Shown in pieces: positions 8,515 through 62,271 of a stretch of DNA of 64,000 bases. Below the pieces are notes generated by a model, which worked only from the letters and a program-made list of their open reading frames with translations, did no database searches and was not told where the DNA came from. The stretch covers positions 38,378,001-38,442,000 of the forward strand of contig NC_043012.1 of NCBI RefSeq assembly GCF_006345805.1, written 5' to 3'. Position numbers and translations under genes: made by a program. The first letter of the stretch is position 1; every line of letters starts with the position of its first letter. The DNA comes from Octopus sinensis (taxonomy: Eukaryota).

Positions 8515-9420
8515 TACTTAAATGATAAATTTATGGAAAGTTTTACAGATTTTTACAGTTCCAGTGATGGACTAGATCTGTAGTCTTCGACTTAGCTTTG
8601 TCCTTTCTTGCTTTCAGAAACCTAATTTCTCAAGATTGGTATTTACGCAGTGTGTTTCATTTCCCAGTGTCCCAATAATTAATTGTAGGTATAAACCTGA
8701 ACTTGTAACGTGGATAGACTAACTGCAGATTTCTCAGTAGTTCGCCGTAGGTATTCTCTTTTTCACTGCTCCTCAGCTTTATGTTAACATTCGCTGGGCA
8801 CCTGATTGCCACAACTGTGCACAATTTCTCTTCTTTATCCCAAATCATTATATTAAGTTTGTTGTTCTTACATTTTATTGAGGTCTTCACTGGGATATTC
8901 CACCAGTGCACGTTTTTATTATGAGTGGCTATGGCTTCTACCATACTGTCGGTTCTTTTTTCTTTGTCTTCGGGGTTTTGCTGCTGACGAATTTCATTAT
9001 GTAATGTCCTACCTACAACATCATGTCTCCTAGGTAGATAATACCGTGATGACATTTTCGGACAAATGTTTATTACGTGGGCGATATCTTCAGTGTCAAC
9101 TCCATAGAATCTGCATCGGTTATCACAATTTACTGCATTTCCCGCATCACTGTCCCTTTTGTGCATCAGGTATTTGATATATATATTTTCTGTTCCTGGA
9201 TTCCCAACGCATACCCTTCAAAGTGGGAGGTACTAATCTGGCTATTAGTCCATGATAGACTGCTTTGATGATCAACGTTACTATCATCTCAGAGATTTCG
9301 ACTAACACGTTGCGACAGAGTCGTGCGATTTCTTCGGGCATGAATTTAAGGTTATCGGGCGAGAGATTTTGCTGTTTAAGGAGCTGCCATCCAAGCCACG
9401 CTATATGAAAGAGGCATAGG
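8515..9420 (-). mobile_element. Decayed R4/Dong-like non-LTR retrotransposon, C-terminal zinc knuckle plus restriction-like endonuclease
   Basis: ORF 8657-9166: CRFYGVDTEDIAHVINIC (degenerate CCHC), RHDVV, KLNIMIWD (KPDI-like), KENTYGEL; frameshifted upstream FEGYALGIQEQ and downstream GTLG...ITGTVKICK. Confidence 0.8.
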
Positions 9421-9517
9421 TTACACACCCGCCTTCGGCTTTTGTTTCATTTTTTTTAGTAAATTCCAGCAATATATATATATACATATACATATATATA
9501 TATATAATATATATATA

Positions 9518-19055: not shown

Positions 19056-19660
19056 GGCGCAGGCTTTGCTGTGTGATAAGAATGTTGCTTAAGGCGGCGA
19101 GCTGGCAGAGTGGTTAGCACGCTGGGCGAAGTGCTTAGCGGTATTTCGTCTGCCGTTATGTTCTGAGTTCAAATTCCGCCGAGGTTGATTCGGCTTTCAT
19201 CCTTTCGGGCTAAATAAATTAAGTACCAGTTACGCACTGGGGTCGATATAATCGACTTAATCCCCTTGTCTGTCTTTGTTTGTCCTCTCTGTATTTAGCC
19301 CCTTGTGGGCAATAAAGAAATAATAAGCTTGTTTCTCAGCCGCAAAGATTGGGTTCAGTCCCACTGTGTGGTAAACTGGGCAAGTATTGTGACGTGTGAG
19401 ACAGAAACTAAAAGAATCCGGACGTTTATACACACATATATTCATATATATTTGTGTGTGTCGGGGGTGGGGGTGGGGTTCGCTCCCGCCACTGCCTGAC
19501 AACTGGTAGTGGTTTGTTTATGTATGCGTGACAATCTTTCGCCAAAGCAGTCAAACAGAACAACTACCAGGTTTTAAAACGTAAGCGCTGGTCTCGATTT
19601 ATTAGAATAAAATGTTCATGGTGGTGCCCCAGCATGGCCACAGTCCAATGACAACTAGGC
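19056..19660 (+). mobile_element. SINE family B interrupted by a family A SINE
   Basis: Head ggcgcagg...gtgtgataag at 19056-19090 resumes at ~19324 (gggttcagtcccact); 3' part ccagcatggccacagtc at ~19630. Confidence 0.65.
19093..19320 (+). mobile_element. tRNA-derived SINE, family A, tail type A1, full length
   Basis: ggcggcgagctggcagag head, gagttcaaattcc B box, tail gccccttgtgggcaataaagaaa. Confidence 0.9.
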
Positions 19661-19918: not shown

Positions 19919-20018
19919 NNNNNNNNNNNNNNNNNNNNNNNNNNNNNNNNNNNNNNNNNNNNNNNNNNNNNNNNNNNNNNNNNNNNNNNNNNNNNNNNNN
20001 NNNNNNNNNNNNNNNNNN
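19919..20018. other. Assembly gap (100 N)
   Basis: Run of 100 n. Confidence 1.
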
Positions 20019-23756: not shown

Positions 23757-24400
23757 ATGGTTTCAAATTTTTGGGGAGGAGATCAGTCGTTCACATCGAC
23801 CCCAGTGTTCAACTGGTATTTATTTTATCGACCCCGAAAGGATGAAATTATTTAATCGACCCCAAAAGGATGAAGGGCAAAGTCAACCTCGTCGGTATGT
23901 GAACTCAGAATGTAGCGATGGGCGAAGTACCTATTTCTTTACTACTCACAAGGGGCTACACACAGAGAGAACAAACAAGGACAGACAAACGGATTAATCG
24001 ATTACATCGACCCCAGTGCGTAACTGGTGCTTAATTTATCGACCCCAAAAGGATGAAAGGCAAAGTCGACCTTGGCGGAATTTGAACTCAGAACGCAGTG
24101 GCGGACGAAATACCGCTAAGCATTTCGCCCGGCCTGCTAACGATTCTGTCAGCTGGCCGACTTAACGATAGCCTTAATACTGGTTTCAAATTTTGGCATA
24201 AGGCCAGGAATTTTGACGGACAGGCAATGTGGTAAGTCGATGACAGCGACTCCAGTGTTCAACTAGTACATAGTTTATCAACACTAAAAGGGTGAATGAT
24301 AAAGACGTCCTCGGCGGAATTTGAACACAGAACGTGGCGACGAGCGAAATGTCGCTAAGTACTAAGCCCGGCGTGCTAACGATTCTCCTGACACACCGCC
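23757..24400 (-). mobile_element. Cluster of three family A SINEs (partial A2 23757-23931, full A1 23932-24163, older A2 24180-24400)
   Basis: Repeated atcgaccccgaaaggatgaaaggcaaagtcgacc and gaatttgaactcagaac blocks. Confidence 0.8.
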
Positions 24401-33080: not shown

Positions 33081-33311
33081 TATTTCTGTATTGCCCACAA
33101 GCGGCTAAACATAGAGGGGACAAACAAGGACAGACAAAGGGATTAAGTCGATTATATTGACCCCAGTGCGTAACTGGTACTGAATTTATCGATCCCGAAA
33201 GGATGAAAGGCAAAGTCGACCTCGGCGCAATTTAAACTCAGAAGGTAACGGCAGACGAAATACCGCTAAGCGTTTCGCCCGGCGCACTAACGTTTCTGCC
33301 AGCTCGCCGCC
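33081..33311 (-). mobile_element. SINE family A, tail A1, full length
   Basis: Reverse complement of 19093-19320. Confidence 0.9.
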
Positions 33312-33326
33312 TTACCAGCCCTACCG

Positions 33327-33542
33327 TATTCGTTTCTACTCTGGGCACAAAGCCCGAAATTTTTCGGAAGACGACCAGTCAATTAGATCGACCCCAGTAC
33401 GCAACTGGTACTTAATTTATCAACTCCGGAAGAATGAAAGGCAAAGTCGACCTCGGCGGAATTTGAACACAGAACGTAAGTACAGACGAAATACAGCTAA
33501 GCATTTCGCCCAGCGTGCTAACGTTTCTGCCAGGTCGCTGCC
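33327..33542 (-). mobile_element. SINE family A, tail A2, full length
   Basis: Same head and body as A1, tail gggctttgtgcccagagtagaaac. Confidence 0.85.
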
Positions 33543-42890: not shown

Positions 42891-43102
42891 TCTTTTCTAC
42901 TCTAGGCACAAGGCTCGAAATTTTTAGTGAGGGGACCAGTCGATTACATCGACTCCAGTACGAAACTGGTACTAAATTTACCGACCCCGAAAGGATGAAA
43001 GCAAAGTCGACCTCGCGGGAATTTGAACTCAGAACGTAAAGACAGTCAAAATACCGCTAAGCATTTCGCCCGGCGTGCTAACCACTCTGCCAGCTCGCCG
43101 CC
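42891..43102 (-). mobile_element. SINE family A, tail A2, full length
   Basis: Head gctcgccgcc on the plus strand at the right end; tail cgagccttgtgcctagagtagaaaaga. Confidence 0.9.
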
Positions 43103-47162: not shown

Positions 47163-47238
<76 letters not shown>

Positions 47239-47256
47239 TATATATATGTATGTATG

Positions 47257-47292
<36 letters not shown>

Positions 47293-47344
47293 ATATTATA
47301 TATATATATATATACATACATGCATTGATACATACATACGTAAA

Positions 47345-48324: not shown

Positions 48325-48387
48325 CATGTTTGGATTAACTTTATATATATATATATATTATATATACATACACATAATATGTATATT

Positions 48388-48515
<128 letters not shown>

Positions 48516-48703
48516 CATACATATAATATGTATATTTATATATATTTATGTGTATATATATATATGTGTGTGTGTATATATATATATATATATACATATA
48601 ATAAGTATATTTATATATATATATGTGTATATATATCTATATATATGTGTGTGTGTGTATGTATATATATATGTATATATATATCACATATATATATATA
48701 TAT

Positions 48704-48745
<42 letters not shown>

Positions 48746-48792
48746 TATATATATATATATATCATATATATATATGTAGATATATATATATA

Positions 48793-48995
48793 TATTTCTT
48801 TACTACCCACAAGGGGCTAAACACAGACGGGACAAACAAAGACAGACAAACGGATTAAGTCGATTATATCGACCCCAGTGTGTAACTGGTACTTAATTTA
48901 TCGACCCCGAAAGGATGAAAGGCAAAGTCGACCTCGGCGGAATTTGAACTCGGAACGTGTCGGCAGACGAAATACAGCTACGCATTTCGCCCAGC
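48793..48995 (-). mobile_element. SINE family A, tail A1, 5'-truncated
   Basis: Reverse complement of the A1 tail and body. Confidence 0.85.
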
Positions 48996-49017
48996 ATACA
49001 CACACGGTCGGTCACGG

Positions 49018-49234
49018 TGTTTATTGAGCGCATCGTTTTAGCCTTCAAATGACGCCACTCCGCTGGCTAAGCGAGCAGGACAACAGAAGAAAGAGTGAGA
49101 GAAAGTTGTGGCGAAAGAGTACAGCAGGGATCGCCACCACCCCCTGCCGGAGCCTCGTGGAGCTTTAGGTGTTTTCGCTCAATAAACACTCACAATGCCC
49201 GTCTGGGAATCGAAACCGCGATCCTACGACCGCG

Positions 49235-49236
<2 letters not shown>
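49018..49236 (-). mobile_element. tRNA-derived SINE, family D, partial
   Basis: Minus strand ggtttcgattccc B box; body shared with 40735-40800. Confidence 0.6.
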
Positions 49237-49277
<41 letters not shown>

Positions 49278-49462
49278 ACATTATATATAAAAGGGCTTAG
49301 TAAATAAATTACTTTGCCGCATACTGAACTCATTAGAAATAGCAGCTAAAAAACTTTTTTAAAGCTATTTCTAATACTTAACGAAAATCTCTCTCATATA
49401 TAGTGTTTGCTTAATTCAACTCACAAAAGTTTGGGGGTAAGGACATCGAAAAATCAAATGCT

Positions 49463-49534
49463 AAGGTTATTTGAGAACGTACGTTTCAAGATTAGTCAAA
49501 AACAACACTTCTATCATCAGCTCAGAAATTCCTT
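49463..49534 (-). ncRNA. Type I hammerhead ribozyme, copy 1
   Basis: Minus strand AAGGAATTTCTGAG-CTGATGA-T-AGA..AGT(loop)ACT.AA.TCT-T-GAAA-CGTACG-TT-CTCAAATAACCTT; predicted cleavage between 49476 and 49475. Confidence 0.7.
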
Positions 49535-50008
49535 GGTTTGGATTTGGAAACACTGAAAATAAGAACAACCCTTTCGAGATCATCTGCTCGTAACTAACAG
49601 TGCCAACAAATTCAAAATAGCAAGCGAAGAATCTCTGTTCTCCCCTTTCCACCAGCGTGGGTTAAAATCATCAAACACTATGCTTATTTCGGTAAAATCC
49701 GAAGCATTAATCAGAGGGAGATTAATTATAATTTCAACAATTGAGGGCACAAATTAATTAATTATTAATCAATTTCACCAAGTGTTCAGTATGCAAAGGG
49801 ACCATTCAAGGCGAATTCAAATTATTACATTATATAAAGGGCTTAGTAAATAAATTACTTTGCCGCATACTGAACTCATTAGAAATAGCAGCTAAAAAAC
49901 TTTTTTAAAGCTATTTCTAATACTTAACGAAAATCTCTCTCATATATAGTGTTTGCTTAATTCAACTCACAAAAGTTTGGGGGTAAGGACATCGAAAAAT
50001 CAAATGCT

Positions 50009-50080
50009 AAGGTTATTTGAGAACGTACGTTTCAAGATTAGTCAAAAACAACACTTCTATCATCAGCTCAGAAATTCCTT
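50009..50080 (-). ncRNA. Type I hammerhead ribozyme, copy 2
   Basis: Identical motif to copy 1; predicted cleavage between 50022 and 50021, 546 nt from copy 1. Confidence 0.7.
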
Positions 50081-50711
50081 GGTTTGGATTTGGAAACACT
50101 GAAAATAAGAACATACCTTTCGAAGATCTGCTCGTAACTAACAGTGCCAACAAATTCAAAATAAGCAAGCGAAGAATCTCTGTTCTCCCCTTTCCACCAG
50201 CGTGGGTTAAAATCATCAAACACTATGCTTATTTCGGTAAAATCCGAAGCATTAATCAGAGGGAGATTAATTATAATTTCAACAATTGAGGGCAAAATTA
50301 ATTAGAGAGATTTTCGTTAAGTATTAGAAATAGCTTTAAAAAAGTTTTTTAGCTGCTATTTCTAATGAGTTCAGTATGCGGCAAAGTAATTTATTTTACT
50401 AAGCCCTTTTATATAATGTAATAATTTGAATTCGCCTTGAATGGTCCCTTTGCATACTGAACACTTGTGTGAAATGATTATTAATAATTAATAATTTGCC
50501 CTCAATTGTTGAAATTATAATAATCTCCCTCTGATTAATGCTTCGGATTTTACCGAAATAAGCATAGTGTTTGATGATTTTAACCCACGCTGGGTGGAAA
50601 GGGGAGAACAGAGATTCTTCGCTTGCTTATTTTGAATTTGTTGGCACTGTTAGTTACGAGCAGATCTTCGAAAGGGTATGTTCTTATTTTCAGTGTTTCC
50701 AAATCCAAACC

Positions 50712-50784
50712 AAGGAATTTCTGAGCTGATGATAGAAGTGTGTGTTTTTGACTAATCTTGAAACGTACGTTCTCAAATAACCTT
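50712..50784 (+). ncRNA. Type I hammerhead ribozyme, copy 3 (inverted arm)
   Basis: CTGATGA 50726-50732, GAAA 50760-50763, palindrome AACGTACGTT 50762-50771, stem I TGAG/CTCA plus AAGG/CCTT; predicted cleavage after 50771. Confidence 0.7.
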
Positions 50785-51059
50785 AGCATTTGATTTTTCG
50801 ATGTCCTTACCCCCCAAACTTTCTGAGTTGAATTAAGCAAACACTATATATGAGAGAGATTTTCGTTAAGTATTAGAAATAGCTTTAAAAAAGTTTTTTA
50901 GCTGCTATTTCTAATGAGTTCAGTATGCGGCAAAGTAATTTATTTTACTAAGCCCTTTTATATAATGTAATAATTTGAATTCGCCTTGAATGGTCCCTTT
51001 GCATACTGAACACTTGGTGAAATTGATTAATAATTAATTAATTTTGCCCTCAATTGTTG

Positions 51060-51095
<36 letters not shown>

Positions 51096-51195
51096 CCAAC
51101 GTTTAGTTACATATCTAGGTGTTGATTATAGATTTACGTATTGAATTTATTTATTGATACGGTCGTAATGATGGTGAAGAATTTGAGGGTTTTAC

Positions 51196-51263
<68 letters not shown>

Positions 51264-51288
51264 TATTATTATTATTATCATTATTATT

Positions 51289-52745: not shown

Positions 52746-53368
52746 TAGTGGTGATCATAATATTGTTATGTCGAACTGGCAATGCTATAATACTACTCGT
52801 AAAACAGAAATACCTAGCAAAATCTCAACACCCCCCACCCCCGCCAAAAAAACAAGAAAATTATTGAAAAAGTCATAAAAATAATAAAATAGCAAAAGAA
52901 AAAACAATAAAGGAAAATAAAGCAAATAAAGCAAATATGCCCAAGCGACCGAAGAGAATGTTATTCTTCTCAGCCACCGGAAGGTAGACATATTGAGGAC
53001 CTTAACAGAAATAACGCCATCTTGCTATTGAATAGAATGTGCTTGCTGCACCAATAGAGCAAGCGGTGAAGCACACAGGGAGTTCGAAGTAGTCAGAATT
53101 GATGCTGACCTCAGGAAGAATATTCAGTAAAGAAACAAATATATAAAAAAAATAATGATAAATAAAACTAAATAAAGCAAACAAACTAAATAACTAAATA
53201 AAACAAACATATGAATTAACTTTGTCACTATTTTTTTTATTTCTTTATAAAAATATTTTTTTCTCAGTTTCGGATTTGAGAGGTGAAAATATTAGACTTG
53301 AAATTACACATTATTATCTTTATTACGATCACTGTCCATTGTTATTATTATTATTATTTTTATTATTA

Positions 53369-53430
<62 letters not shown>

Positions 53431-53441
53431 TATTACTGACA

Positions 53442-53472
<31 letters not shown>

Positions 53473-53505
53473 TATTATTATTATCATTATTATTATTATA
53501 TTATT

Positions 53506-53548
<43 letters not shown>

Positions 53549-53612
53549 TTATTATCAGTATTATATTATTATTATTATTATTATTATATTATTACTGACA
53601 TTATTATTATTA

Positions 53613-53645
<33 letters not shown>

Positions 53646-53712
53646 GATTATTAATATTATTATTATTATTATTATTATTATTTTATTATTATTACTTTCA
53701 CTATTATCATTC

Positions 53713-59884: not shown

Positions 59885-60116
59885 ATTTCTTTACTACCCA
59901 CAAGGAGCTAAACACAGAGAGGAAAAACAAGGACGGACAAACGGATTAAGCCGATTATATCGACACCAGTGCGTAACTGGTACTTATTTAATCGACCCCG
60001 AAAGGATGAAAGGCAATGTCGACCTCCGCGGATTTGAACTCAGAACGTAGCAGCAGACGAAATACTTATTTCTTTATTACCCACAAGGGGCTACACATAG
60101 GGGGGGGGGACAAACA
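59885..60116 (-). mobile_element. SINE family A1, partial tandem dimer
   Basis: A second A1 tail starts at 60066, directly after gacgaaatac. Confidence 0.8.
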
Positions 60117-62041: not shown

Positions 62042-62271
62042 TATTTCTTTACTACCCACAAGGGGCTAAACACAGAGGGGACAAACAAGGAGAGACAAAC
62101 GGATTAAGTCGATTATATCGACCCCAGTGCGTAACTGGTACTGAATTTAATGGCCCCGAAAGGATGAAAGACAAAGTCGACCTCGGCGGAATTTGAATTC
62201 AGAACGTAATGGCAGACGAAATACCGCTACGCATTTCGCCCGTCGTGCTAATGTTTCTGCCAGCTCGCCGC
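62042..62271 (-). mobile_element. SINE family A, tail A1, full length
   Basis: Reverse complement of 19093-19320. Confidence 0.9.

What the first reader, a model, noticed from the sequence alone, without database searches (positions are those of the whole stretch)
49274..51067. Retrozyme-like array: ~547-bp tandem units each carrying a type I hammerhead ribozyme
Seen: three copies of the motif AAGGAATTTCTGAG-CTGATGA-[stem II]-GAAA-CGTACG-TT-CTCAAATAACCTT at 49463-49534 (-), 50009-50080 (-) and 50712-50784 (+). All catalytic core positions are intact. Stem I (TGAG/CTCA extended by AAGG/CCTT through an internal loop) closes exactly at the GUU cleavage triplet. Stem III is a 10-nt palindrome (AACGTACGTT) able to form a double hammerhead. 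The two tandem cleavage sites are 546 nt apart, and the unit has no meaningful ORF. Established: metazoan non-LTR retrozymes are tandem non-coding repeats with one type I HHR per monomer that yield abundant circular RNAs and are thought to use PLE machinery. Inference: this locus could release a 546-nt monomer or circRNA, large for a metazoan retrozyme and to my knowledge not described in cephalopods. Caveat: the base of stem II is non-canonical (U-U, or A-U with a bulge, instead of G10.1-C11.1), which may slow cleavage.
Basis: partly seen in the sequence, partly recalled or inferred. Interest (0 to 1): 0.92.

Follow-up and report, generated by a model that had tools for sequence, protein, structure and literature searches.

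The report
Octopus hammerhead retrozyme-like repeat insertion
A small cluster of a 546-bp non-coding repeat in an octopus-type genome carries a hammerhead-ribozyme-like motif in each unit and looks like an insertion made by Penelope-type retrotransposon machinery, so it is a probable new member of the known "retrozyme" class rather than something new in kind.

Summary
Three near-identical 72-73-nt motifs sit at the stated coordinates. All have an intact hammerhead core, a 4-bp helix I closing at GUU, and the 8-nt palindrome ACGUACGU as helix III. They lie once per unit in a 546-bp, 33% GC, non-coding repeat.

The block is not a plain array. It has two arms placed head to head: 1.9 units with the ribozyme sense on the minus strand, and 1.4 units with it on the plus strand. 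Both sense-strand 3' ends abut a split (TA)n microsatellite. The 5'-truncated ends meet at 50301-50304 and are not mirror-symmetric. This layout (partial tandem, inverted 5'-truncated copy, (TA)n target) is the published insertion signature of Penelope-like elements. My best reading is therefore a PLE-mobilised non-autonomous hammerhead element, a non-LTR retrozyme (confidence about 0.68).

Caveats:
- No Rfam hammerhead model matches, even at E<=10.
- Position 10.1/11.1 is U-U.
- Helices I and II are thermodynamically marginal.
- No other copies could be reached, so covariation, copy number and expression remain untested.

The unit size is within the published range of 51-972 bp. Type I hammerheads are already recorded in a squid genome. 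This is a new member of a known kind, of modest interest.

The parts
49237..49273 (.). Left half of the split (TA)n microsatellite, the presumed target site
   Evidence: TRF row 49237-49289. A perfect (TA) run occupies 49237-49273. Unit homology begins at ATTATTACATT right after it.
49274..49822 (-). Left arm, outer full unit L1. The ribozyme-sense strand is the minus strand, and its sense 3' end abuts (TA)n.
   Evidence: blastn of the unit against the window and alignment A1.
49823..50304 (-). Left arm, inner unit L2. It is 5'-truncated in the sense orientation (unit positions 1-487) and 97.7% identical to L1.
49463..49534 (-). Hammerhead-like motif 1. Predicted cleavage falls between 49476 (U17) and 49475 (C1.1).
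50009..50080 (-). Hammerhead-like motif 2, identical to motif 1. Predicted cleavage falls between 50022 and 50021. Together with motif 1 it bounds a 546-nt monomer (50021 down to 49476).
   Evidence: The monomer folds at -135.9 kcal/mol with z = -4.75.
50301..50304 (.). Head-to-head junction of the two 5'-truncated arms, with 1-4 nt of microhomology (ATTA). It joins sense position about 60 of the left arm to about 423 of the right arm, so it is not mirror-symmetric.
   Evidence: The blastn ranges of the two arms overlap at 50301-50304, confirmed by reading the sequence and alignment A1.
50301..50423 (+). Right arm, inner partial unit R0 (5'-truncated; sense strand is the plus strand).
50424..50975 (+). 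Right arm, full unit R1, 95.8% identical to L1.
50712..50784 (+). Hammerhead-like motif 3, with one extra G in distal helix II. Predicted cleavage falls between 50771 and 50772. It is the only ribozyme on this strand.
50976..51067 (+). Right arm, outer partial unit R2 (first ~93 sense positions). Its 3' end merges into (TA)n through a 4-5 nt overlap (TTATA).
51064..51092 (.). Right half of the split (TA)n microsatellite.
   Evidence: TRF row 51064-51092 and the perfect run found.
49332..49375 (.). A 44-nt near-palindromic hairpin present in every unit (also at 49878-49921, 50323-50366 and 50872-50915). It contributes to the strongly self-paired unit fold.
   Evidence: the repeat finder I14/I15. 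Spurious CRISPR-DR50 hits at E=1. It appears as a long hairpin in the MFE folds.

Best explanation
The block 49274-51067 is one insertion of a short (546 nt), non-coding, AT-rich, non-autonomous retroelement into a (TA)n microsatellite of an octopod genome. Each unit carries a type I hammerhead-derived motif. The element therefore belongs to the metazoan non-LTR retrozyme / Penelope-like-element (PLE) satellite class.

Proposed mechanism:
1. Tandem copies are transcribed.
2. The monomeric helix III is only 2 bp plus a GUAC loop, so the ribozyme can become active only when the ACGUACGU palindromes of two neighbouring copies pair into an 8-bp helix III (a double hammerhead).
3. Cleavage after GUU at both sites releases a 546-nt RNA with a 5'-OH and a 2',3'-cyclic phosphate. 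Helix I brings its ends together.
4. A host tRNA ligase (RtcB type) can circularise this RNA.
5. A PLE reverse transcriptase/GIY-YIG endonuclease supplied in trans cuts a (TA)n tract. Both exposed 3'-OH ends prime on AU-rich stretches of an uncleaved multimer or a religated circle (twin priming).
6. Each cDNA runs for more than one unit length, and the two cDNAs are joined at a short microhomology. The result is two head-to-head, 5'-truncated partial multimers.

Shown by the sequence: the motif, the repeat structure, the junctions, the (TA)n flanks and the non-coding, strongly self-paired unit. Inferred: every RNA-level step, the involvement of a PLE enzyme, and whether this ribozyme variant still cleaves.
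For: Motif:
- The hammerhead core is complete, with A15.1-U16.1, H17, and helix I closing at the cleavage site.
- The motif passes a type I descriptor. With a palindromic helix III that descriptor occurs only 5e-4 times per shuffled 64-kb window.

Double-hammerhead features:
- The monomeric helix III costs energy (hammerhead fold -1.5 against -2.9 kcal/mol without it), whereas the palindrome duplex is worth -11.6 kcal/mol.
- In the MFE of the 661-nt two-ribozyme transcript, the two ACGUACGU segments pair with each other.
- Published metazoan type I hammerheads have a 1-2 bp helix III capped by a small palindromic loop and act as dimers (PMC4209133).
- HHR_Amex2 has the same U-U at the base of helix II (PMC7229834).

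Retrozyme features:
- Head-to-tail period of 546 bp with one motif per unit.
- 33% GC and no coding capacity.
- Strongly self-paired monomer, z = -4.75.
- These match the published description: low GC, tandem, highly self-paired.

PLE insertion signature (PMC8557442: partial tandems, an adjacent inverted 5'-truncated copy, (TA)n preferred targets):
- Both arms exceed one unit in length.
- They are inverted and their 5'-truncated ends meet in the middle.
- Both outer ends abut (TA)n.
- The orientation is the one TPRT requires if the hammerhead-sense strand is the template.
- No arm boundary lies at the cleavage site, and each arm crosses it uninterrupted. This fits a multimeric or circular template.

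Host:
- The host is an octopod.
- PLEs are annotated in Octopus.
Against: - No Rfam hammerhead family matches at the gathering score, at E<=10 on 1.9 kb, or at E<=10 on 101 nt.
- Position 10.1/11.1 is U-U rather than the highly conserved G-C (one search lists G10.1-C11.1 as a hallmark of PLE hammerheads).
- Helix I (-0.9 kcal/mol) and helix II (-0.8 kcal/mol: 3 bp, a 3x3 internal loop, then 2-3 bp) are marginal.
- The monomer motif folds no better than shuffles (z = +0.7), and its MFE is a different rod-like fold.
- The antisense strand of the unit is almost as structured as the sense strand (z = -4.26), so the fold does not mark a strand.
- Only three near-identical copies are available, so there is no covariation and no test of core conservation.
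- No other copy, PLE ORF or second hammerhead occurs in the window.
- No relatives were found in any reachable collection.
- Units within one arm differ (97.7% identity) and share variants in a mosaic pattern across arms. A single monomeric circle per arm would not give that.
- The (TA)n tracts could in principle have expanded from the unit's own TA-rich ends.
Confidence: 0.68

Rival explanations
1. The hammerhead resemblance is coincidental. The 546-bp repeat is some other low-copy tandem/inverted repeat (a minisatellite or an unrelated non-autonomous retroposon) that happens to contain CUGAUGA...GAAA with foldable flanks.
For: - Rfam covariance models do not recognise the motif.
- There is no thermodynamic signal for the motif.
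- 10.1/11.1 is non-canonical and the helices are weak.
- A relaxed descriptor hits 3% of shuffled 64-kb windows. Even the strict palindromic version predicts roughly 20 chance sites in a ~2.8-Gb genome (extrapolated), so a genome-wide scan could surface one.
Against: - The chance of such a motif inside one given 546-nt unit is about 4e-6.
- The motif coincides with three independent features not used to find it: the PLE-type tandem-plus-inverted architecture, the (TA)n target, and the TPRT-compatible orientation of the motif strand.
- The motif's peculiarities (palindromic minimal helix III, U-U at the base of helix II) have precedents in validated animal hammerheads.
Confidence: 0.15
2. The block is part of an autonomous Penelope-like element: a solo pseudo-LTR or the 3' end of a heavily 5'-truncated PLE, not a separate non-autonomous retrozyme family.
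For: - PLE hammerheads lie in the pLTRs.
- Most genomic PLE hammerheads are single motifs from truncated copies.
- Pairs of motifs 100-700 bp apart on opposite strands are described (PMC4209133).
- Retrozymes are phylogenetically close to pLTRs.
Against: - The head-to-tail period is 546 bp in both arms. The repeating entity is therefore 546 bp long, not the 3-4 kb of a full PLE.
- No RT or GIY-YIG remnant occurs in the unit or anywhere in the window.
Confidence: 0.08
3. The structure arose at the DNA level: a foldback or MITE-type DNA transposon with TA target sites, or a fold-back (hairpin) duplication of a short satellite.
For: - The block has long inverted arms made of tandem subrepeats, as foldback elements do.
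- TA-rich flanks could be TA target-site duplications.
- (TA)n tracts are fragile and form hairpins.
Against: - The outer termini are not inverted copies of each other. The left arm ends at sense position ~546 and the right at ~93; I12 is only 73% complementary and TA-driven.
- The inner junction joins positions ~60 and ~423, so the structure is not mirror-symmetric as a fold-back would be.
- There is no transposase and no terminal inverted repeat.
Confidence: 0.05
4. The inverted arrangement is an assembly artefact, for example a chimeric or palindromic long read or a collapsed repeat.
For: - PLE-type tandem/inverted insertions are known to cause assembly problems.
- The window contains an N gap elsewhere, at 19919-20018.
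Against: - The arms differ by ~4% with many indels and are offset rather than mirror images. Read-level palindromic chimeras produce near-perfect mirror copies.
- Both arms end cleanly in matching (TA)n tracts.
Confidence: 0.03

Closest known systems
Metazoan non-LTR retrozymes (Cervera & de la Pena 2020, PMC7229834; Li, Clavereau & Pollet 2026 preprint, 10.64898/2026.07.22.740005)
   Same: - Non-coding, low-GC head-to-tail repeats with one type I hammerhead per monomer.
- A strongly self-paired predicted monomer RNA.
- A small number of units per locus (75% of families have at most 7).
- A unit length within the published 51-972 bp range.
- Proposed dependence on PLE machinery.
   Different: - The unit is longer than the 170-400 nt circRNAs shown experimentally.
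- The hammerhead is not recognised by Rfam models, and helix II is long (26-27 nt) and poorly paired.
- Only one locus is seen.
- Expression, circularity and copy number are untested.
- The locus includes an inverted arm, which is not part of the usual retrozyme description.
Axolotl HHR_Amex2 retrozyme ribozyme (PMC7229834)
   Same: - A U-U mismatch at the base of helix II.
- A 2-bp helix III capped by a tetraloop.
- Efficient action expected only as a dimer.
   Different: - No sequence relationship was tested, because the figure sequences are not held as text.
- The axolotl unit is 350 bp with ~60,000 copies. Here the unit is 546 bp and the copy number is unknown.
Penelope-like element insertions and their pLTR min-hammerheads (PMC4209133; PMC8557442)
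   Same: - Partial tandem plus an adjacent inverted 5'-truncated copy.
- Insertion into (TA)n, so no target-site duplication can be discerned.
- A short helix I (4-5 bp), a long helix II and a palindromic helix III/loop 3.
- Hammerhead pairs on opposite strands a few hundred bp apart.
   Different: - No RT/GIY-YIG ORF is present, and the 546-bp period shows a non-autonomous element.
- G10.1-C11.1, highly conserved in PLE hammerheads, is replaced by U-U.
- No 30-40 bp 'tail' was recognised.
L1 twin-priming inversions (established knowledge of LINE-1 target-primed reverse transcription)
   Same: - Two cDNAs are primed from both strands of one staggered break.
- They are joined internally at a microhomology, giving an inverted, 5'-truncated structure.
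   Different: - There is no poly(A) tail.
- Both arms are longer than one unit.
- The enzyme is presumed to be a PLE RT/EN rather than L1 ORF2p.

Membership tests
Hammerhead ribozyme, type I | Conserved catalytic core: C3 U4 G5 A6 N7 G8 A9 and G12 A13 A14 | tested here: met
   CUGAUGA and GAAA are present and correctly placed in all three copies.
Hammerhead ribozyme, type I | A15.1-U16.1 pair followed by H17 (not G) at the cleavage site, with helix I open-ended and starting at 1.1/2.1 | tested here: met
   The sequence reads GAAA-C-GUAC-G-U-U|CUCA, with G2.1-C1.1, A-U, G-C and U-A pairs. The motif passes the descriptor.
Hammerhead ribozyme, type I | G10.1-C11.1 closing pair of helix II (highly conserved, not absolute) | tested here: not met
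   10.1/11.1 is U-U, followed by A-U, G-C and A-U. A natural precedent exists in HHR_Amex2.
Hammerhead ribozyme, type I | Three helices stable enough to form the junction | tested here: inconclusive
   Helix I is worth -0.9 and helix II -0.8 kcal/mol, and the monomeric helix III is unfavourable. The 8-bp intermolecular helix III is worth -11.6 kcal/mol and forms in the MFE of the dimeric transcript. The motif z-score is +0.7.
Hammerhead ribozyme, type I | Match to curated covariance models (Rfam RF00163 and the other hammerhead families) | tested here: not met
   No hammerhead hit at the gathering score, at E<=10 on 1.9 kb, or at E<=10 on 101 nt.
Hammerhead ribozyme, type I | Covariation in helices and core conservation across diverged homologues | tested here: inconclusive
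   Only three copies are available, and they differ by one inserted G in distal helix II. No relatives were retrievable.
Hammerhead ribozyme, type I | Site-specific self-cleavage | not testable with these tools
   Needs in vitro transcription of monomer and dimer constructs.
Metazoan non-LTR retrozyme | [quoted passage not shown] | tested here: met
   The period is 546 bp (549 in the right arm). There are 1.9 and 1.4 units, with three motifs at one per unit.
Metazoan non-LTR retrozyme | Non-coding, low GC (<45-50%), no LTR/PBS/PPT | tested here: met
   GC is 33%. ORF pieces are at most 90 aa, with no Pfam hit above cut-off and no homologues.
Metazoan non-LTR retrozyme | Monomer RNA predicted to be stable and highly self-paired | tested here: met
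   MFE is -135.9 kcal/mol with z = -4.75 and 0 of 100 shuffles as good. The antisense strand is similar at z = -4.26, so the feature is not strand-specific.
Metazoan non-LTR retrozyme | Expressed as unit-length linear and circular RNA | not testable with these tools
   No transcriptome of the source organism is reachable.
Metazoan non-LTR retrozyme | Multicopy, dispersed family co-existing with autonomous PLEs | not testable with these tools
   The window holds one locus and no PLE ORF. The source genome cannot be searched by DNA. From the literature only, PLEs are annotated in Octopus vulgaris.
PLE-type insertion (target-primed, tandem/inverted) | Partial tandem plus an adjacent inverted 5'-truncated copy | tested here: met
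   The arms are 49274-50304 (-) and 50301-51067 (+). The sense 5' ends meet at the centre and the 3' ends lie outside. The feature is described in PMC8557442.
PLE-type insertion (target-primed, tandem/inverted) | Microsatellite, especially (TA)n, target | tested here: met
   (TA)n runs at 49237-49273 and 51064-51092 directly abut both ends. (TA)n covers 4% of the window, so the background is not negligible.
PLE-type insertion (target-primed, tandem/inverted) | ORF with telomerase-like RT and GIY-YIG endonuclease | tested here: not met
   None in the unit or the window. The element would have to be mobilised in trans.

The most novel reading that the evidence does not exclude
This may be the first cephalopod retrozyme family. 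In this reading, a divergent hammerhead that Rfam cannot see (U-U at 10.1/11.1, a 26-nt interrupted helix II, obligate double-hammerhead helix III) still releases a 546-nt circular RNA. The genomic footprint at this locus is twin-primed arms, each longer than one unit, crossing the cleavage site, set in a (TA)n tract. That would be direct structural evidence that retrozyme circles or multimers are integrated by Penelope-type target-primed reverse transcription. In addition, read-through of the inverted arms would give a ~770-bp hairpin RNA, a possible ADAR or small-RNA substrate in an animal known for heavy RNA editing.
Probability: 0.3. Interest if true: 0.5.

Novelty: new member of a known kind. 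Interest (0 to 1): 0.32.

Why it matters
If confirmed, it would extend hammerhead retrozymes to cephalopods. It would also give a clean example in which the insertion architecture itself points to Penelope-like machinery as the mobilising enzyme. That link has so far rested on co-occurrence and on pLTR sequence similarity. Finally, it illustrates that covariance-model annotation (Rfam) misses divergent dimer-dependent hammerheads, so cephalopod hammerhead counts from genome papers are likely underestimates. None of this changes the current picture of retrozymes. It adds a taxon and a well-resolved locus.

Tried and rejected
Searches that led nowhere:
1. Rfam at the gathering score on the whole window, and at E<=10 on 1.9 kb and on 101 nt, gave no hammerhead or other ribozyme family. 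The only hits were sub-threshold noise: miRNA and CRISPR-DR hits caused by hairpins, and SNORD51/sR12 at 12-15 bits caused by the UGAUGA box. A C/D-box snoRNA reading was rejected because the scores are far below the cut-offs of 38-50 bits.
2. I tried to reach other genomic copies through ORFs of the unit. Two word-index protein searches, one exhaustive HMMER search of 1.8 billion representatives and an exact look-up of 9 unit ORFs all came back empty.
3. The DNA pattern GCTGATGA-N18-34-GAAACGTACGTTC was scanned in JGI metagenomes, IMG/VR and GTDB genomes. It gave 3, 0 and 3 hits. All are prokaryotic, lack helix I and occur at about the chance expectation.
4. A 20.8-kb Octopus bimaculoides locus (L007) was fetched through the LINE-like ORF. 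It shares SINE-type repeats with the window but contains no copy of the unit.

Tests without power or specificity:
5. Thermodynamic support for the monomeric hammerhead was absent (z = +0.7).
6. Variation between copies cannot test selection, because the ribozyme differs by a single indel.

Alternative readings rejected:
7. MITE, foldback element, Helitron and fold-back duplication were rejected because the termini are not inverted copies of each other and the arms are offset.
8. A coding function was rejected.
9. A tRNA gene next to the locus was rejected. The flank is a SINE.
Full report
**What is in the sequence**

Extracting 49463-49534(-), 50009-50080(-) and 50712-50784(+) gives AAGGAAUUUCUGAG / CUGAUGA / 26-27 nt / GAAA / CGUACG / UU / CUCAAAUAACCUU. 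The two minus-strand copies are identical. The plus-strand copy has one extra G in the distal part of helix II.

In hammerhead numbering:
- C3-A9 and G12-A14 are intact.
- A15.1-U16.1 and C15.2-G16.2 flank a GUAC tetraloop.
- H17 is U.
- G2.1-C1.1, A-U, G-C and U-A form a 4-bp helix I right at the cleavage site.
- An outer AAGG/CCUU extension lies across a 6x5 internal loop.
- Helix II opens with U10.1-U11.1, then A-U, G-C and A-U, a 3x3 internal loop, and 2-3 further pairs.

Predicted cleavage falls at 49476|49475 and 50022|50021 on the minus strand, 546 nt apart, and at 50771|50772 on the plus strand.

**Is it more than chance?**

The core pattern gives 3 hits against 0.26 expected. The three are copies of one repeat, so this is a single event.

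| Descriptor | Hits in shuffled 64-kb windows |
|---|---|
| Relaxed type I (helix I at least 4 bp; helix II at least 3 bp with one basal mismatch allowed; helix III at least 2 bp; H17) | 0.033 per window |
| Same, but helix III must be a perfect 6-12-nt palindrome of the double-hammerhead kind | 2 in 4000 windows (5e-4 per window, about 4e-6 per 546-nt unit) |

In the real window the relaxed descriptor finds only these three sites. The strict figure still allows roughly 20 chance sites in a genome of a few Gb. The motif alone is therefore suggestive, not proof. The context decides.

**Architecture of the block**

blastn of the unit against the window shows the block is not a plain array (alignment A1).
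- The left arm, 49274-50304, holds unit 1-546 plus unit 1-487, with the ribozyme sense on the minus strand (1.9 units).
- The right arm, 50301-51067, holds the reverse complement of unit 124-1, 546-1 and 546-454, with the ribozyme sense on the plus strand (1.4 units).
- Read in the ribozyme-sense direction, both arms have their 5' ends at the centre. There they are truncated at different unit positions (about 60 and about 423) and joined over 1-4 nt (ATTA, 50301-50304).
- Both 3' ends lie outside, where they run directly into (TA)n tracts at 49237-49273 and 51064-51092.
- The right junction shares 4-5 nt (TTATA) with the tract, and the left one 2-3 nt.
- No arm boundary coincides with the cleavage site, and each arm crosses a cleavage site without interruption.
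- The window holds no further copy.

**What the unit is**

The unit has 33% GC. It has only short ORF pieces (at most 90 aa), with no Pfam family above cut-off and no homologue in any protein collection searched.

The 546-nt RNA between the two minus-strand cleavage sites folds at -135.9 kcal/mol, with z = -4.75 and 0 of 100 shuffles as good. Helix I-type pairing brings its ends together. The antisense strand is nearly as structured (z = -4.26), so the fold does not identify the transcribed strand.

**The ribozyme as a structure**

As a monomer the hammerhead fold is poor. It is worth -1.5 kcal/mol against an MFE of -8.6 for a different, rod-like fold. Helix I contributes -0.9 and helix II -0.8 kcal/mol, and the 2-bp helix III hairpin costs energy. 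The motif folds no better than shuffles (z = +0.7).

The ACGUACGU palindrome pairs with a second copy at -11.6 kcal/mol. In the MFE of the 661-nt transcript holding both left-arm ribozymes, the two palindromes pair with each other. If the ribozyme works, it works as a double hammerhead.

This is the known behaviour of metazoan type I hammerheads with a 1-2-bp helix III and a small palindromic loop (PMC4209133). It is also the behaviour of the axolotl HHR_Amex2, which shares the U-U mismatch at the base of helix II and cleaves efficiently only in dimeric constructs (PMC7229834).

Against membership:
- G10.1-C11.1 is described as highly conserved in PLE hammerheads.
- No Rfam hammerhead model matches at any threshold tried.

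**Comparison with known systems**

Penelope-like elements are described as inserting with heavy 5' truncation, as partial tandems, and often with an inverted 5'-truncated copy adjacent. They show a bias for microsatellites, (TA)n in particular, so that target-site duplications cannot be read (PMC8557442). Pairs of PLE hammerheads 100-700 bp apart on opposite strands are also reported.

The present locus shows all of these features. It also has the one orientation compatible with target-primed reverse transcription from both strands of a break (twin priming) if the hammerhead-sense strand was the template.

The 546-bp head-to-tail period and the absence of any RT or GIY-YIG remnant make the element non-autonomous. 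That is the definition of a metazoan non-LTR retrozyme: low GC, tandem, one type I hammerhead per unit, self-paired RNA, and a suspected dependence on PLEs.

A fold-back duplication, a foldback or MITE transposon, and a read-level assembly palindrome all predict mirror-symmetric arms or matching termini. Neither is seen.

**Host**

The LINE-like ORF at 8657-9166(-) has as its best named relative an Octopus bimaculoides protein (62% identity). The O. bimaculoides locus that encodes that protein shares several interspersed repeats with the window at 70-85% identity. The window is therefore octopod. PLEs are annotated in Octopus vulgaris (PMC13282606).

**Novelty**

- Retrozyme consensus lengths of 51-972 bp are now on record, and most families have at most 7 units per locus. 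The size and the small cluster are therefore ordinary.
- The giant squid genome paper already lists 235 Rfam Hammerhead_1 matches (PMC6962438).
- I found no paper in the held library describing cephalopod retrozymes.
- The finding is a probable new member of a known kind. The insertion architecture is its most informative aspect.

**Limits**

- No second locus, no diverged copy, no transcriptome and no PLE consensus sequence of the host could be reached. Covariation, copy number, expression and the pLTR relationship remain open.
- Units within one arm differ by 2.3% and share variants with the other arm in a mosaic pattern. This fits a heterogeneous multimeric template or later conversion better than rolling-circle copying of one circle. 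I could not resolve it.
- Whether this ribozyme variant still cleaves is unknown. I put it at roughly even odds, given the weak helices.

Noticed in passing
window 48796-49236 (-), and 19121-19319, 23935-24133, 33084-33283, 33377-33514, 42938-43074, 59887-60065, 62045-62241: A SINE-type interspersed repeat lies directly left of the (TA)n tract. Its ~200-nt 3' module recurs at least 8 times in the window at 85-92% identity. The 5' part has a tRNA-like B-box (GGTTTCGATTCC), but ARAGORN calls no tRNA.
   Followed up: partly
window 8657-9446 (-): This is a remnant of a LINE-type ORF. It has a weak zf-RVT match and is 62% identical to Octopus bimaculoides LOC106878562. That match is the basis for assigning the window to an octopod.
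   Followed up: partly
whole window; e.g. 47175-47318, 48342-48795, 51192-51288, 53338-53694: Microsatellite density is extreme. Perfect (TA)>=6 tracts alone cover 4.0% of the window in 121 runs, and there are long ATT/TTA, CAT and AC-type arrays. This background matters when judging the (TA)n flanks of the insertion.
   Followed up: partly
window 19919-20018: A run of 100 N marks an assembly gap.
   Followed up: no
window 49332-49375, 49878-49921, 50323-50366, 50872-50915: Each unit contains a 44-nt near-palindromic hairpin (ATTAGAAATAGC...GCTATTTCTAAT). It produces spurious CRISPR-DR50 matches at E=1. Its role in the unit, if any, is unknown.
   Followed up: no
window 49274-51067 (alignment A1): Sequence variants are shared in a mosaic pattern among the five unit segments. 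L2 equals R1 at one indel cluster, and R2 equals L1 in the AT-rich stretch. L1 equals L2 and R0 equals R1 elsewhere. This is not what one circular template per arm predicts.
   Followed up: partly
window 49274-51067, both strands: A read-through transcript of the whole block would fold into a hairpin with ~770-bp arms about 96% complementary. That would be a potential double-stranded RNA substrate for editing or small-RNA pathways. This is an inference only.
   Followed up: no
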